Part shown: positions 22,831-35,400 of the stretch, one piece after another
Layout: every line of letters starts with the position of its first letter
Numbering within the stretch: the stretch's first letter is position 1
The notes under the pieces: generated by a model
Told to the model about the DNA's origin: nothing
The model's input: only the letters and a program-made list of their open reading frames with translations
Databases searched by the model: none
Source of the DNA: Guillardia theta CCMP2712
Lineage: Eukaryota > Protista > Cryptophyta
DNA length: 64,000 nt
NCBI RefSeq assembly: GCF_000315625.1
Contig: NW_005434622.1
Coordinates: forward strand, 138,883-202,882
Direction of reading: 5' to 3'
Program-made: the position numbers and the translations under genes

Positions 22831-24441
22831 CTGCACGGCGGCAGCGTCGTGTGTCTCTCAATCAGTTGTGGACCGTCGGATAGCAGGAGCAAGTAGAGCT
22901 GTAGTAGCCGAGTTTATTAGAAATCTAGATTAGTCGCATCGGGTCCTCCCCGGCCTATTCTAGTCTAAAGGGGTTCTCACGCTTGGCAGAGCGGCCACAG
23001 CAAATCAAGCTTGTGCGAACTTCTGCCTACCCTACCCTTGACTGATGAAGCTACACGTCGGAGTGTATAGACTCGTGACAAGCAGCCTGGCAGGATGAAC
23101 TTCCCAGGAAAGATGGGTTCCTCCTCCATCAAGGTTGTCTTCTTTGAGGGGTGGTTTATGGGTTCTCTTTGCTCGTGCAAGTAGAACACTACCCTGCCTC
23201 TCTTCGTACGGTTTCAAGCCGTGACCTCTGCTTCCCTCTTCGAAGCTACTAAGAGGATCATCGTCAGCAGAGCTAGTTGGTCCTGTTCCCCTTTGCGTGT
23301 ACACCACGCCTGTGTTGCATTTGCTTGTGTGTGAGAGACATTGGGAGAATATCGAGAGTGATAGTAGACCTCACTCCTCCTGTCACACCTCTTCCCTCTT
23401 AGTAAAGAAATCCAACTTAAGTTCTTGTTGAGCTGCTCTGAAGGCTTCCCTGAGAAGCTTCGGGGGGTGACAACCTACACAGCAGCAGAATCGCCCGAAG
23501 AAAATCAGTTGAACTTCGGAAACGACTCTGAGCAAATGTAGTGCAGTGTAATGAGCATTTCTTGTGATACTCTGTAGTGCATGCAGACACCCACAGGATC
23601 GCAATTTGAAATCTCGTTGTGCTGCTGTTGGAGAGGAGGAAGAGGACGACTGGATATTAGACCAAAACAAACCTGCCTCAAAACCAACTCCAGATAGGAG
23701 ACTTGGCATGTTCACTCTCCCCCTCCTCCCTTGTTCAAGCACTGCGGGGCTCCTCTAGCCAGCAGGAGATGGACATCACCTCTGAACAATGCAGATCAAG
23801 ATCAAAAGAGCACGGAAGGCTCAAGCTCAGAAAGAAAACTTCACAACGCGTCCGTTGCAAAAGAGACTAACAACAAACGCTGAAGAGAACACATACCCAA
23901 GCTAACCAAAGAACTTGGACAGGCTCCCGACCCAAAATCCTCTGCATACGTTGGCAAGCGCAGAAATGCGATGATCGAGGACCCAGCAACGAGATTGACC
24001 AAGTCTACGAGGACTGATGCAACATGGCACCAACTTTCATCATGTCAGGAAATCATACCACAGCTGCCATAGCAATTTGAATAACTCGAGCCCTAGATAA
24101 GCGACTTGGCATACGTGTGCTCCTCGAAGCTCAGGGACCCTCTCCAGCTGACAGGTGATGCCTGTTTTGCCGCCCTTGAGATCGCTCCCCGGCAGGCTGT
24201 TCTCGAGACAAGACCAGTCTCGGGACAAGGCCGACCAGCCATACATGTCCATCAAACAAGAAAATCGCGTTTCATGCAAGCTGCGTGAGCACATCATGAT
24301 GATGTGCGCTGCATCAAGACATACAGGAGCTGCTTGTCAGATTGCTGGGGTATCAGTTTCAAAGCCTCATCTCCTTCATTACTAACCTATCACTCTTCCT
24401 TCAAGTCGTCTACTCCTGCCAAGTCGCTTCTCTGCGTCTTG

Positions 24442-25363
24442 CTAAGTCTTGCAAGCGCGGGCCTTGCTTTCGAGGATCAGCTCGCCCAATGGTGCTATTT
24501 TGATATCGAAGACATCGAGATGCCTATTGAACTTGTTGCACACTTCTCTGAAGAATCGCTTTTCCACTTCGCTGGCGCGCTTGTCCAAGTACACGAAGTT
24601 CCCCAGTGGCCAACGGAAGATATCAGTCGGCAGGCTCTTGTAGAGATGTATAGTCGTAGTGAAATCAGCAGGCAGCTCCATATCCTCGTTGAGCCCCAGC
24701 CTTCTCCACATCTCACGGCGAAGATCTTGAGACTGCAACATCCTGTATATTCTCTCCATCGGCAGCGATTCTTTCTCCAGCCGATACCAGCCCTCTCGAG
24801 ACACGTTGGAAGCGTCAAACAGACGACTTATCTCCTCGTCGCTCAAGTTCACATTGCATGCTACTTGCTGGAACAGGTCTTGAAGTAGACATCTGATCGC
24901 AGAGGTACATCGGTTAGTAACCCCAAATCAAGCCCGGTGCAGTCATGTACCTTTGGGTAGGATACGAGAGTATATACTTGAAGTAGCTCTCTTCTTTCTC
25001 AAGTTCGTTTCGGAGCTGTCTCTCAAGGAACTGTTTTTCAATCTTGATTGAAGAAGCCAAATCCTTTTTCTGATCGTGCAGCTCAAGCTCTACCAGCTGC
25101 TTCTTCCTATCCTTCTGTAGTATCCAGAATGCAACTTCATAGGGCGCCAAGCTCTGGGTCCCCAGCATCTTCTGAGCTCGGGCGAGAAACGGGTCGGAAG
25201 GCTCTTTGGGGCTCTCAGGGTCTGCAGCCGTATCGCTTGAGCCTGTGGTCATCAAGCGATGCCGCAAGCTGCGAGGACGCGTCAGGGAGGCCATGGCGAC
25301 TTTCAGGAGATGCTGAGCAGCACTGTGACATGCTCTTATGGGGACGCCGCTTGCTACCAGCAT
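24442..25363 (-). CDS. Orphan family copy 1 (cassette type A), two exons, putative mitochondrial presequence + coiled coil + globular domain
   Basis: ATG 25363, intron 24893-24950, stop 24442; spliced frame reads YPTQR/CLLQDLFQQVACNVNLSDEE..ARACKT. Confidence 0.75.
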
Positions 25364-25950
25364 AGTGTTCAAGTTCTGAATCCTACCAGGAGGTAAAGCC
25401 TTCGCGGTAGGGGTAGATGCAGGCGACCCGGTCACCGGGTGCGGTAGGTCCAGGGTGGTATGTTGAACGGCGTGGCTACAACGGTTGAAGTCAAACCAAT
25501 GCTCTTGTCCTGCATCTGTCATGCAACAATAAGTGTCTGACAGATGCCGGACACGAGCATAAGTCTGAGGTCTTGTCCGGCAGGGAGGGCAAAGTTGCCA
25601 GTAAACATTTTGTCCTGCATTTTCAATGAAAGAAGAAAAAAACTGTGAAAGGCAGGGCATGCTTATGGAAGGGTGCTCATAGCAGAAAACATATGCAGGA
25701 CAAACTAATTAGTCCAATACTTTCACTCAACTTTGGCACCTCTAATTTCTCCTACCCCCTTGCCCTGCACTGTCAAATCTTATATAGTAAATGTGTGGCC
25801 CCAATACCCGGGTTTAGATCTTTTAGAGGGCCCACGGTATGATATTCGATCATACTATCCCTGGACCTACCGCACCCGGTGACCGGGTCGCCTGCATCTA
25901 CCCCTACCGCGAAGGCTTTACCTCCTGGTAGGATTCAGAACTTGAACACT

Positions 25951-33014: not shown

Positions 33015-33444
33015 CAAGACGCAGAGAAGCGACTTGGCGGTCAAGCTCAGGACAAGAAGCCTGAGTAGACGACTCGAAGGAAGAGTGATAGGTTAGTAAT
33101 GAAGGAGATGAGGCTTTGAAACTGATACCCCCACAATCTGACAAGCACCTCCTGTAATATTCTCACACGGCTTGCATGAAGCGCGTCACTTGTCAGTCTT
33201 GCATCAGTCCTTGTAGACTTGGTCATTCTCGTTGCTGGGTCCTCGATTATCGCATTTCTCAGCTTGCCAACACATGCAGAGGAGTTTTGGTCGGGAGTCT
33301 GTCCAAGTGCTCTTTGGTTAGCTTGGGTATGTGTTCTGGATTATCCCCAAGAGTAGCCCAAGGATAGAGCTCGCTCCTCCTTGAGCTATCATAGTATCGT
33401 GATGATGTGCGCTGCGTCGAGACATTGACAAGCGAGGCCCGGCC

Positions 33445-35400
33445 CTAGAGAGCTTGCAGCGCTTGTGCGTGTCCCCCAAACTCAACTGATAACTTCACCT
33501 CACTGCGTGCACGACCATCTCCCGCGCCATGCCAGCGATGTCGCTGTGGCCGCCGCCGAAGGAATGAGACGCATACCCGGACCGCACCTGCGATGATGGA
33601 AGCGATGGACAGGGAGGCCTTGAGCTGACGAAAGATCCTGGACCGGATGCGTTTGCAAGTCGGATCACCTGAGACATCTTGCGAGGCCGAGAGACCATCC
33701 AGCGCTGCCGTTTCCTCGTTCGCCGAGCGATCCGCCAGCCACCACAGAAAGCGCAACGCATCGTCCTGCAAGAGTCCATCAGTGCTGGCGATGATGGGAA
33801 GAAAGGCCTGTGGCGGGACGTCAGTGCAGAGCATGTGCGTGACGATGCCCTCGGATCTTCCTGTGTGCTGCTGCTTGCAATTTATTTCGAGCCTGGTCCG
33901 GTATCCCATCATTGTCAAAAACATGTGACATGCTGAAGTCCAGGATTAACCCATGCCATCGGCCTCCAGTACCCTGCAATTGCGCAAGCTCAAATTCCCC
34001 TACGTGATGATCTTCAGGGCCATGCTGGGAAATGTTCCGCCTGGTGCCGGGAACGCCTTGCACGTGGACGCGGCATCTCACTCCGGAATCTTTGATTAGG
34101 GTACTGAGGGCGGCATCGCACTTCTCATGCGCATCCGTCCATAACGAGCTGCGGTGCCTGCAGGTTGCCATGTGTGTGGTCCCCCCAGGATGGTGGAGAT
34201 GATGGTGGCATTTATCGCAGTGCGGCGGGAGGTCAACCGGCAATCCATGCAGAAACTTGTCCGCGGCAGCCACCAAGCTGATGGGCTGCTGCTCAAAGAT
34301 CCCAAGGTTTGTACTTTCCATAATTGATTGCCAGATCGTGCGCTGAGGGATAAACTGAGACAGAAGTGCATCAACCGGGGGGCCTGGTACTCGAAGGGGA
34401 GTAGAGAAGCTGCAGTGGTGTGCCAACAAAGATCGCTGGCGCTCAGAAAGGTAAGCTCGAATACTGCAGAACCGAGGAAACTCCATGAGGGATTGTGCCG
34501 TGAGCTCCCGCTGGGCTGGGATGAAAAGCACACTGCCCGACGTCCCGAATAAATCAGGCGAGAGGATCCAGTTGTTGTCGCACGCATGATGAAGCTCCGC
34601 CGAGGAGTTGTACTCGGAGATTCCCTGCTCCATCAAGTGCCTGTGAGTGTCCAAGAAGGCAGCCAGCATGGGGATCACATCCGCCGCGTCCGCTTGCTGT
34701 GGTTGTCGGATTCGAAGTTCAGGTAACGAAGATGGCAATGTCTCCCGCCCATTGGACAAACTTGGCAGTGGCGACCCTCCTGCGGGGTGAACCCATCCCC
34801 TCCAGCACTGTAAGGCAACTCAGCGAGTTAGTGACGTTTGAAGTAGGCAAACTGAAGGTCAGACGGAGGGTTGCCAGGGGCGGGTTGGAGGTCGGATAAA
34901 CTCTCCTGAGCCTGTTGCTGTGGCCATTGAAACACCTTCCCAAGAAGACAGAGGTTCCGGCGCGACGTCAAAGCGCTTGCACTGAGCAGCTGTCAAGGCC
35001 GGGGGGATTCCAAGCAAAATGTATTGGAGGGTGGGAACGTGGGTTGTCTTCAAAAAGCTGCTTGAGACCCAACGCAATGAAACTGTTCCAACTGGGTCAA
35101 TTCAGCGTTGAGGGCATTCACCTTTGCAGTGATAAACTCTTGCTGAAAGGACTCTGTGACTGAGACCATATCGGGATACCTCCAAAGGATCATCCCCTAG
35201 CCTCGGAAGGCAAACTACTGCAAGCCCTGGTACCTACTGCAAATATGCTCTTGGATTGCCCGTTGCTGACTAGATGGAAGTTGGCACTAGGATGAGGAAA
35301 ATATCTGCGAATCTCTGGGTTGGATCTCCAATCCCAGCTCTTGTTTCAACGTACGGTATCAACAAGAGACGCAGTGGCTTGTGCGGCAACAACGAGCTTC
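33445..35400 (-). mobile_element. Decayed non-LTR retrotransposon 3' half (RLE-bearing, CRE-like)
   Basis: Zn knuckle CDKC..HMATC then H..CDAAL and RLE-like LILDFSMSH; frameshifted FLPIIASTDGLLQDDALRFLWWLAD; upstream GGIPIW thumb-like remnant; multiple frameshifts. Confidence 0.65.

What the first reader, a model, noticed from the sequence alone, without database searches (positions are those of the whole stretch)
23885..33560. Two head-to-head palindromes with swapped cassettes: flip-flop inversion of an orphan gene pair
Seen: the outer flanks are collinear direct duplicates (24036-24440 vs 29198-29600; 26905-27370 vs 33060-33560), but the inner genes are exchanged. Palindrome 1 has type A (TQSLAPY/YRLEKE/TIHLYKSLPT) left and type B (SNSEKVT/GLLDYE/GHLHGNLPG) right; palindrome 2 has B left and A right. 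The spacer-border words travel with the type (ggtccagggtggtat with A, ggtccaggg(a)tagta with B). Inference: recombination between the inverted arms inverted the interior, a shufflon-like route to new head/tail combinations. No recombinase is visible, so ordinary homologous recombination is the default explanation.
Basis: partly seen in the sequence, partly recalled or inferred. Interest (0 to 1): 0.8.

Follow-up and report, generated by a model that had tools for sequence, protein, structure and literature searches.

The report
Twin gene palindromes, swapped variable cassettes
In the alga Guillardia theta, two neighbouring mirror-image gene pairs carry the same two gene variants on opposite sides; the pattern is real, but ordinary recombination between the mirror arms explains it most simply, as in other known palindromes, and nothing shows a working genetic switch.

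Summary
The window is Guillardia theta scaffold JH993016.1. It holds a local family of two-exon genes (58-nt intron). These form two intact head-to-head pairs: P1 (G1 type A, G2 type B) and P2 (G4 type B, G5 type A).

Informative sites fall into clean blocks:
- 5' arms group by palindrome.
- A ~585-nt cassette groups by type, on swapped sides.
- Outer flanks group by side.

There were 5 pattern changes over 225 sites, against at least 96 in each of 100,000 shuffles.

The best reading is a segmental duplication of a gene-pair palindrome, then one reciprocal exchange between the inverted 3' constant blocks that inverted the interior, then arm-to-arm gene conversion. Two successive gene conversions would give the same picture and cannot be excluded.

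Ongoing flip-flop is untested, because only short-read contigs were available. No recombinase domain lies within about 10 kb. The spacers of P1 and P2 are unrelated.

The genes are not orphans. Relatives occur elsewhere in G. theta and in Hanusia phi.

Independent data hint at an extra intact paralog and at other mosaics, so the reference may be incomplete here.

Earlier notes of this scan describe other inverted gene pairs in this genome that are homogenised by conversion. This is a new member of a known kind, of moderate interest.

The parts
23886..24022 (-). Inverted copy (90-91%) of the start of the right flank R, lying outside the left flank of palindrome 1
   Evidence: (I17)
24034..24320 (.). 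Left flank L, copy 1 (direct repeat of 29196-29460)
   Evidence: (D5, D12), 9, 13, 68: 0.8% substitutions
24442..25363 (-). G1, type A gene of palindrome 1 (GUITHDRAFT_111457): exon 1 24951-25363, intron 24893-24950, exon 2 24442-24892
25456..25858 (.). Spacer 1 (403 nt), unrelated to spacer 2
25951..26908 (+). G2, type B gene of palindrome 1 (GUITHDRAFT_111458), with its own longer 'beta' C-terminal tail and 3' end
27027..27375 (.). Right flank R, copy 1 (direct repeat of 33220-33568); its last ~100 nt belong to repeat E312
   Evidence: (D3)
27378..27510 (-). Remnant of a minus-strand family gene: 5' arm, start codon and about 26 nt of coding sequence. It is the left arm of a third head-to-head unit whose right gene is G3
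27662..28560 (+). G3, divergent type C paralog with a family-type 5' leader (245-aa gene model, presumably GUITHDRAFT_111459)
28543..29069 (+). Remnant of a fourth unit: A-type border plus spacer-1-like piece (28543-28624), upstream piece u (28669-28745, the last 46 nt being 5' arm), fused directly to the 3' end of a B-like gene (28746-29069, 96-100% to G2's 3' end)
   Evidence: (D2, D6, D15, D19)
29196..29460 (.). Left flank L, copy 2
29602..30532 (-). G4, type B gene of palindrome 2 (GUITHDRAFT_111460): the B cassette runs to about 29777-29790, then an A-like ('alpha') 3' end
   Evidence: (I1, I6)
30618..31989 (.). Spacer 2 (1372 nt), holding multi-copy fragments (30750-30963, 31433-31756) and its own ~31-nt inverted repeats (30611-30649, 31890-31925)
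32087..33014 (+). G5, type A gene of palindrome 2 (GUITHDRAFT_111461): exon 1 32087-32508, intron 32509-32566, exon 2 32567-33014
33220..33568 (.). Right flank R, copy 2, running on into repeat E312
35458..35829 (-). G6f, an isolated 372-nt type A cassette fragment that includes the intron. It is 99.7% identical to G5 and its flanks are unrelated to the family
   Evidence: (I4)

Best explanation
The locus is a tandem array of head-to-head gene-pair palindromes belonging to a cryptophyte-specific family of unknown function. [quoted passage not shown] A unit of the form L flank, A gene on the minus strand, spacer, B gene on the plus strand, R flank was duplicated in direct orientation. In one copy, an intrachromatid crossover between the inverted 3' constant blocks (in G4 at about 29777-29790) inverted everything between them, so A and B changed sides while L and R stayed collinear. 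Arm-to-arm conversion then made the outer 327 nt of palindrome 2 identical. The 5' arms and spacer were later overwritten or replaced. This is ordinary homologous recombination and a historical event, not a dedicated switch. Shown here: the mosaic, the swap, concerted evolution within each palindrome, and intact reading frames. Inferred: the order of events, and crossover rather than conversion.
For: The swap is reciprocal. Each palindrome keeps one A and one B, which a single crossover gives directly. A-A (1.7%), B-B (3.3% over the whole cassette, about 1.9% before the G2-specific tail), L (0.8%) and R (up to 2.6%) divergences between the palindromes are all similar. This is as expected if both cassettes date from the same duplication. 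The small border words at the inner ends of the arms go with cassette type, although the 300 nt between them are homogenised within each palindrome. This suggests the whole interior has opposite polarity. The arms offer ample substrate: 327 nt at 99% and 267 nt at 99% in P2, 128 nt at 100% plus 173 nt at 98% in P1. The G4-G5 identity block begins exactly where the B cassette ends (I1, I6). There are no gaps in the assembly. In an independent DNA-like run, P2-specific spacer contigs match the window with 0 or 1 differences, at a depth (90-98) close to that of unique G3 sequence (118). No recombinase or transposase domain was found nearby. The same process, frequent arm-to-arm conversion with rare inversions by intrachromatid crossover, is documented for human Y palindrome P6 (PMC3723533).
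Against: A pure inversion predicts a G2-type ('beta') 3' end on G5, and spacers that are inverted copies of each other. Neither is seen, so at least two more events must be assumed. Conversion without any crossover needs the same number of steps. In palindrome P6, conversions outnumber inversions about 19 to 1 (56 against 3). The side of each cassette in P2 rests on the original Sanger assembly across a 327-nt, 99%-identical inverted repeat. It could not be rechecked, because the public contigs collapse the copies.
Confidence: 0.5

Rival explanations
1. There was no inversion, only two successive non-reciprocal gene conversions. In palindrome 2, the right gene (B with beta tail) was first overwritten by the left gene (A with alpha tail). 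The left gene's cassette was then overwritten from the inverted B gene of palindrome 1, about 3 kb away.
For: It needs the same number of steps as inversion plus conversion. The locus is full of conversion mosaics: 5' arm haplotypes are shared in patches among G1-G5, G3 and L001, G2's 3' end is shared with the 28746-29069 remnant, and a lone 372-nt cassette copy G6f shows that cassette-sized pieces get copied. Conversions far outnumber inversions in a studied palindrome (PMC3723533). This rival directly explains why both P2 genes carry the alpha 3' end.
Against: The B-B divergence is not smaller than the A-A or flank divergence, as a later copy from G2 would predict, although the counts are small. 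The border words at the inner arm ends go with cassette type, which a cassette-only conversion does not explain, although that is only 1-2 bases. The outcome happens to be exactly reciprocal.
Confidence: 0.27
2. The inverted interior arose in the duplication event itself, by replication template switching between the inverted arms. This would be a break-induced or fork-stalling type of rearrangement, as proposed for inverted-repeat-mediated complex duplications in humans (from my own knowledge).
For: The locus shows many junctions typical of error-prone repair: truncated units at 27378-27510 and 28543-29069, a fragment of repeat E312 at 29077-29197 right beside the second L flank, and the isolated G6f fragment.
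Against: No junction with microhomology or filler sequence marks the edges of the swapped segment. The edges lie in long homologous blocks, as for plain homologous recombination.
Confidence: 0.08
3. It is an assembly artefact. The interior of palindrome 2 was placed in the wrong orientation between its identical outer arms, or the locus is mis-assembled or collapsed.
For: The P2 outer arms are 327 nt at 99%. Independent data hold a family member that the window lacks: the B' gene of L001, and contigs of runs X2 and X6. Run X6 also has a 'goes back 274' joint at 28942 to 28669. The reference is therefore probably incomplete near 28.7 kb.
Against: 327 nt is well under Sanger read length, so spanning reads should have fixed the orientation. 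There are no gaps. P2-specific sequence is present at about single-copy depth in an independent run. The possible collapse lies outside both palindromes.
Confidence: 0.07
4. It is an active diversity generator. Recombination among the inverted constant blocks keeps reshuffling cassette halves and tails within cultures or between isolates, giving new protein combinations.
For: Contig L004 from another sample joins a G2-type spacer side and 5' arm (287/288) to G1-type exon 1 and early exon 2 (140/140, 134/134), then to a G2-type later patch (70/70), then to an alpha tail. L001 and the X2/X6 contig carry a B cassette with an A-type patch. B occurs with two different tails, in G2 and in G4. dN/dS between A and B is about 1.0-1.2 over the cassette.
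Against: L004 may be a chimeric path of a short-read metagenome assembler. No run showed alternative junctions for P2, though the power to see them was low. dN/dS near 1 also fits relaxed constraint. No dedicated enzyme or recombination site was found.
Confidence: 0.06

Closest known systems
Gene-bearing palindromes of mammalian sex chromosomes, for example human Y palindrome P6 (Hallast et al. 2013, PMC3723533; see also PMC8327919)
   Same: Inverted arms carry gene copies around a unique spacer. Arm-to-arm gene conversion keeps the arms nearly identical. Occasional intrachromatid crossover inverts what lies between the exchange points without harm.
   Different: These arms are about 1.2 kb rather than 10 kb to over 1 Mb. 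Each holds one small head-to-head gene. They sit on an ordinary nuclear scaffold of a unicellular alga. They contain a diverged cassette that escapes homogenisation. Two paralogous palindromes lying side by side reveal the swap without any population data.
Long inverted repeats with divergent or convergent homologous gene pairs in Caenorhabditis (Zhao et al. 2007, PMC1803023)
   Same: Head-to-head paralog pairs and their intergenic sequence form near-perfect inverted repeats. The structure is conserved better than the sequence, implying active homogenisation.
   Different: In the abstract read here, that work reports no variable cassette inside the arms and no pair of palindromes with exchanged contents.
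Other inverted gene pairs of Guillardia theta noted by this scan (s1-441165 LysM-like tail-to-tail pair; s1-431658 PKD2-like head-to-head pair)
   Same: Same genome. Inverted paralog pairs are kept alike by conversion, and no evidence of a switch was found.
   Different: Those are single pairs. This locus has an array of units, and two of them show the cassettes on opposite sides. I did not recheck those notes.
Shufflons and other invertible-segment systems of bacteria and plasmids (Rci, Hin, Gin, Cin; from my own knowledge)
   Same: Inversion between inverted repeats could in principle join a constant gene part to alternative variable parts.
   Different: Those systems need a site-specific recombinase gene beside the segments and short defined crossover sites, and both orientations coexist in a culture. 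Here there is no recombinase and the exchange lies in long homologous blocks. Each gene keeps its own promoter and cassette, so only the 3' tail and flank change partners. Coexistence of orientations is untested.
Flip-flop isomers of plastid genomes and of the yeast 2-micron plasmid (from my own knowledge)
   Same: Recombination between inverted repeats inverts the segment between them.
   Different: In those cases both isomers are present in about equal amounts in every cell. In the 2-micron plasmid a dedicated FLP recombinase acts. Nothing of that sort is shown here.

Membership tests
Gene palindrome under concerted evolution (arm-to-arm gene conversion) | Two inverted arms with gene copies around a non-repeated spacer | tested here: met
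   P1 arms are about 24322-25455 and 25859-26996. P2 arms are about 29460-30617 and 31990-33156. The spacers are 403 and 1372 nt.
Gene palindrome under concerted evolution (arm-to-arm gene conversion) | Arms more alike within a palindrome than between paralogous palindromes | tested here: met
   5' arms differ by 0.3% (G1-G2) and 1.0% (G4-G5) within palindromes, against 6.1-6.7% plus 4-5 indels between them. The 3' constant block differs by 0.4% between G4 and G5. The third unit also shares arm-specific states. This does not hold for P1's 3' constant block (10%).
Inversion by homologous recombination between inverted repeats | Flanks collinear, interior in opposite orientation, and exchange points inside homologous inverted blocks | tested here: inconclusive
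   The flanks are collinear and the cassettes are swapped, with the edges of the swap in constant blocks. The spacers are unrelated and the 5' arms are homogenised, so inversion of the centre itself cannot be seen. Only 1-2 border bases speak for it.
Inversion by homologous recombination between inverted repeats | Reciprocal products, with nothing lost or duplicated | tested here: inconclusive
   One A and one B are kept (met). The expected beta-type 3' end on G5 is missing and must be explained by a later conversion.
Shufflon or site-specific invertible segment | Site-specific recombinase gene at the locus | tested here: not met
   No recombinase, integrase or transposase Pfam domain in the family genes, in the 312-aa ORF, or in 10 further ORFs of 140 aa or more between 15.5 and 38.7 kb. 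Exons shorter than the ORFs scanned could be missed.
Shufflon or site-specific invertible segment | Short conserved crossover sites at the segment borders | tested here: not met
   The borders of the swapped block lie within 100-330-nt stretches of homology. No short repeated site is set apart from them.
Shufflon or site-specific invertible segment | Both orientations coexist in one culture | not testable with these tools
   Only collapsed short-read contigs and 60-nt RNA reads were available. No alternative junction was reported, but the power was very low.
Orphan (taxonomically unique) gene | No detectable relatives outside the locus | tested here: not met
   The profile search found 21 proteins with E-value up to 1e-3. 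They include four other G. theta genes on other scaffolds and Hanusia phi transcripts. There was no Pfam family above threshold.

The most novel reading that the evidence does not exclude
The constant blocks of this family act as recombination handles. Exchange between inverted (and direct) copies keeps producing new combinations of first cassette half, second cassette half and C-terminal tail in expressed genes. Isolates, or cells within a culture, would then differ in their repertoire. That would be a homologous-recombination-driven protein diversification locus in a cryptophyte.
Probability: 0.08. Interest if true: 0.65.

Novelty: new member of a known kind. Interest (0 to 1): 0.36.

Why it matters
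Two sister palindromes lying side by side give a rare built-in control. They show, from one genome sequence, that the interior of a small gene palindrome has changed sides while its flanks stayed put. They also show that conversion homogenises the constant parts yet stops at a diverged cassette. This extends the palindrome behaviour known from animal sex chromosomes to kilobase-sized gene pairs in a unicellular alga. It flags a fast-changing, lineage-specific gene family, and it marks a spot where the reference assembly probably lacks a gene copy. It does not reveal a new mechanism.

Tried and rejected
1. Read-level test of orientation. The single read-laying run covered 27350-33349 with four runs. 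The contigs collapse the 98%-identical copies, and their 'other letters' are mostly those of the sister copies G1/G2, plus a B'-like copy at 30022-30030. The only raw-read run has 60-nt RNA reads and almost no coverage of the genes. No verdict on flip-flop was possible.
2. Searching for other strains' contigs:
- The antisense ORF of exon 2 found nothing.
- A protein scan and an exact 31-mer scan of JGI metagenome contigs found nothing.
- The exact proteins of G4 and G5 occur only on the reference scaffold.
3. Function:
- Pfam gave only sub-threshold hits.
- The ESM Atlas gave no usable hit.
- The AlphaFold2 model has mean pLDDT 53, so I did not run a fold search on it.
- No paper mentions the five locus tags or the ENA project.
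4. Homology between the two spacers, which would have shown directly whether the centre is inverted. None was found beyond the 19-nt border.
5. A transposon as carrier of the gene pair. Repeat E312 lies beside P2 and beside a distant family member on another scaffold, but it is outside the swapped block and its ORF has no recognisable domain. I rejected it as the cause and kept it as a note.
6. Positive selection on the cassettes. dN/dS is about 1 and not significantly above it.
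Full report
WHAT THE SEQUENCE IS

The window has few long ORFs, no tRNA and no Rfam hit. Proteins encoded in the finding are identical to hypothetical proteins GUITHDRAFT_111457, 111458, 111460 and 111461 of Guillardia theta CCMP2712, on scaffold JH993016.1. Earlier notes of the scan name the same alga. The window has no N gaps.

THE GENES

Each gene has two exons split by a 58-nt intron with GT..AG ends. 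In G5, exon 1 is 32087-32508, the intron is 32509-32566 and exon 2 is 32567-33014. The public gene models use the same splice. A contig of run X6 joins exon 2 directly to the end of exon 1, so the intron is removed in RNA.

Five intact copies lie between 24.4 and 33.0 kb:
- G1, minus strand, type A.
- G2, plus strand, type B.
- G3, plus strand, a much more divergent type C.
- G4, minus strand, type B.
- G5, plus strand, type A.

All have open frames of 287-299 codons counted from the first ATG of the shared leader. The public models start further in.

Yes. I aligned the four half-palindromes from the centre outwards and classified every informative site.

- 5' arm (about 315 columns: upstream region, start codon and leader). 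The 15 informative sites all group G1 with G2 and G4 with G5. An 18-nt indel, outside that count, does the same.
- Cassette (about 585 nt: variable end of exon 1, the intron and two thirds of exon 2). 84 sites group G1 with G5 and G2 with G4. There is one exception.
- 3' constant block. G4 and G5 are 99.6% identical here, and G2 stands apart.
- Flanks. All informative sites group by side.

There are five pattern changes among 225 sites. None of 100,000 shuffles gave fewer than 96.

Divergences:

| Segment | Comparison | Substitutions |
|---|---|---|
| Cassette | A with A (G1-G5) | 1.7% |
| Cassette | B with B (G2-G4) | 3.3% |
| Cassette | A with B | 16-18% (only ~60% identity in the most diverged 100 nt) |
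| Flank | L with L | 0.8% |
| Flank | R with R | up to 2.6% |
| 5' arm | within a palindrome | 0.3-1.0% |
| 5' arm | between palindromes | 6.1-6.7% plus 4-5 indels |

WIDER ANATOMY

The locus is an array of head-to-head units, not just two.

- At 27378-27510 lies the 5' arm, start codon and first codons of a minus-strand gene, cut off against the end of flank R. It faces G3, so G3 is the surviving right arm of a third unit.
- After G3's stop codon come an A-type border word and 70 nt of spacer-1-like sequence (28543-28624). Then comes a piece I call u (28669-28745), whose last 46 nt are 5' arm. It is fused directly to the 3' end of a B-like gene (28746-29069, 96-100% to G2's 3' end). This is an internally deleted fourth unit.
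- A lone 372-nt piece of the A cassette, intron included and 99.7% identical to G5, lies at 35458-35829 between unrelated sequence.
- A repeat of at least 1.15 kb (33470-34620, with a 312-aa ORF that has no recognisable domain) adjoins flank R of P2. Fragments of it lie at 27277-27375 and 29077-29197. A 90.7% copy lies just downstream of a distant family member on another scaffold.
- Spacer 2 contains multi-copy fragments and its own short inverted repeats. It shares nothing with spacer 1 beyond the 19-nt border.

HOW THE SWAP MOST LIKELY AROSE

The equal and low divergence of L, R, A and B between P1 and P2 points to one duplication of a whole unit (flank L, gene, spacer, gene, flank R) in direct orientation. 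A single intrachromatid crossover between the inverted 3' constant blocks of one copy then inverts the interior and puts A and B on opposite sides.

In G4, the B-type tract ends at about 29777-29790, right after the GHLHGNLPG patch. From there outwards G4 is A-like and 99% identical to G5 over 327 nt. The crossover model predicts that G5 should have received G2's distinct 'beta' tail. It has the 'alpha' tail instead, so an arm-to-arm conversion of the outer block must follow. The near-perfect identity of that block fits this.

The border words beside the spacers (ATACCA with A, TACTA with B) keep company with the cassette type across 300 nt of homogenised arm. This favours inversion of the whole interior, but it rests on one or two bases. 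The higher divergence of the 5' arms between palindromes, and the unrelated spacers, need further events. These would be conversion from other family members (G3 shares the 18-nt insertion with P2 and other sites with P1) and insertion of repeats into spacer 2.

THE MAIN RIVAL

Two conversions, first right arm from left arm in P2 and then the left cassette from G2, give the same end state in the same number of steps. In the one palindrome where both were counted, conversions outnumbered inversions 56 to 3 (PMC3723533).

Against this rival:
- The B-B divergence is not smaller than the A-A divergence.
- The result is exactly reciprocal.
- The border words go with cassette type.

None of these is strong. 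I put inversion at about 0.5, conversion only at about 0.27, a replicative origin at about 0.08, an artefact at about 0.07, and an active reshuffling system at about 0.06.

IS IT STILL SWITCHING?

This is untested. Run X1 behaves as DNA and matches unique parts of the window without differences. Its contigs specific to spacer 2 have a depth of 90-98, against 118 for unique G3 sequence, so P2 is not a minor variant.

All contigs break or collapse inside the repeats. The variant letters seen on G4 and G5 are mostly those of G2 and G1, with A-type letters at 30022-30030 from a B'-like copy. The joints reported are cross-mappings from P1 (29069 to 33220 is G2's junction with R) or concern the 28.7-kb remnant. 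No joint suggests a flipped P2, but such a joint could hardly have been seen.

HINTS OF MORE COPIES AND OTHER MOSAICS

- Contig L001, from an ENA metagenome assembly, is identical to 28671-28745 and then runs into an intact B-type gene. That gene is 96% identical to G2 and carries an A-type patch at the start of exon 2.
- Runs X2 (unspliced) and X6 (spliced) carry a B-like contig with eight differences from G4. It fits none of G1, G2, G4 or G5, but agrees with L001 at all eight sites.
- Run X6 also joins 28745 to an intact 5' arm, and joins 28942 back to 28669.
- Together these suggest that the remnant at 28669-29069 is intact, or is followed by an intact copy, in other material. The reference would then have a deletion or a collapse there.
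- Contig L004, from the same ENA project, combines G2's spacer side and 5' arm, G1's exon 1 and early exon 2, G2's later patch and an alpha tail. If real, it shows exchange inside the constant blocks in another isolate. It could equally be a chimeric assembly path.

WHAT THE PROTEINS ARE

This is unknown.
- There is no Pfam family above threshold, no Atlas lead, and only a low-confidence, mostly helical model.
- The family is not orphan. A profile search of 1.8 billion representatives gives 21 hits at E-value up to 1e-3, among them four other G. theta genes and Hanusia phi transcripts.
- Those other G. theta members are annotated as single genes, not pairs.
- Between A and B, dN/dS is about 1.0-1.2 over the cassette. 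The constant blocks have no differences at all, the signature of homogenisation rather than of selection alone.

COMPARISON WITH WHAT IS KNOWN

This works like the gene palindromes of mammalian sex chromosomes, with arm-to-arm conversion and rare inversion (PMC3723533, PMC8327919). It also resembles the inverted gene pairs of Caenorhabditis (PMC1803023). Other inverted pairs in this same genome were read in the same way by earlier notes of the scan.

It is not a shufflon. There is no recombinase and there are no short crossover sites. An inversion here exchanges only the 3' tail and flank, because each gene carries its own promoter and cassette with it.

VERDICT

This is a real and tidy example of a known process in a new organism and gene family, with an unresolved question about extra copies.

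Noticed in passing
window 28669-29069; L001 1-798: The reference holds an internally deleted B-like gene (5' arm fused to the 3' end at 28745/28746). An ENA contig with the identical upstream 75 nt runs into an intact B-type gene, and runs X2 and X6 carry a matching extra variant. The reference may lack a gene copy here.
   Followed up: partly
L004 1-1216 (ENA ERZ930064): The contig mixes G2-type spacer side and 5' arm, G1-type exon 1 and early exon 2, a G2-type later patch and an alpha tail. It is either a real recombinant in another isolate or an assembler chimera.
   Followed up: partly
window 35458-35829: An isolated 372-nt copy of the type A cassette, intron included. It is 99.7% identical to G5, on the opposite strand, and lies between sequence unrelated to the family. 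It looks like a recent ectopic copy or repair filler.
   Followed up: partly
window 33470-34620 (ORF 33821-34759, minus strand); fragments 27277-27375 and 29077-29197; L005 9398-10546: A repeat of at least 1.15 kb with a 312-aa ORF that has no Pfam domain. A 90.7% copy lies just downstream of a distant family member (GUITHDRAFT_151843) on scaffold JH992986.1. It is probably a mobile element, and its association with family genes at two loci is unexplained.
   Followed up: partly
window 30750-30963: This stretch of spacer 2 has 10-30 times the depth of unique sequence in DNA contigs. It also attracts many 60-nt RNA reads that match only in part, so it is a fragment of an abundant expressed repeat.
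   Followed up: no
window 31433-31756: A 324-nt stretch that is a 97% copy of part of 1-3-kb multi-copy contigs in three runs. It is a repeat fragment inside spacer 2.
   Followed up: no
window 30611-30649 and 31890-31925: Roughly 31-nt inverted repeats bound the core of spacer 2. The left one abuts the B-type border word. On the right, 70 nt lie between the repeat and the A-type border, and that stretch includes a short piece resembling 28669-28699.
   Followed up: partly
window 27378-27510: A truncated minus-strand family gene (5' arm plus about 26 nt of coding sequence) faces G3. The locus therefore once held at least four head-to-head units.
   Followed up: yes
L006 5742-8963 and L007 5892-8618: Two distant family members on other scaffolds (GUITHDRAFT_104576 and 121826) each sit directly downstream of a HECT-domain gene. 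This suggests a duplicated two-gene block.
   Followed up: no
window 25363-25260, 32087-32190 (leader of the family proteins): Upstream of the annotated start (MTTGSS...), all copies keep an in-frame leader beginning MLVASGVP...AMAS followed by an Arg-rich stretch. It could be a signal or targeting sequence that the public models omit. I did not test this.
   Followed up: no
window 29602-33014, run X6: In the run that behaves as RNA, the contigs over the cassettes carry the letters of the P1 genes (G1, G2) and of the extra B' copy. P2-specific letters and the P2-type 5' arm were not seen. P2 may be weakly expressed, or its variants were dropped by the contig builder.
   Followed up: no
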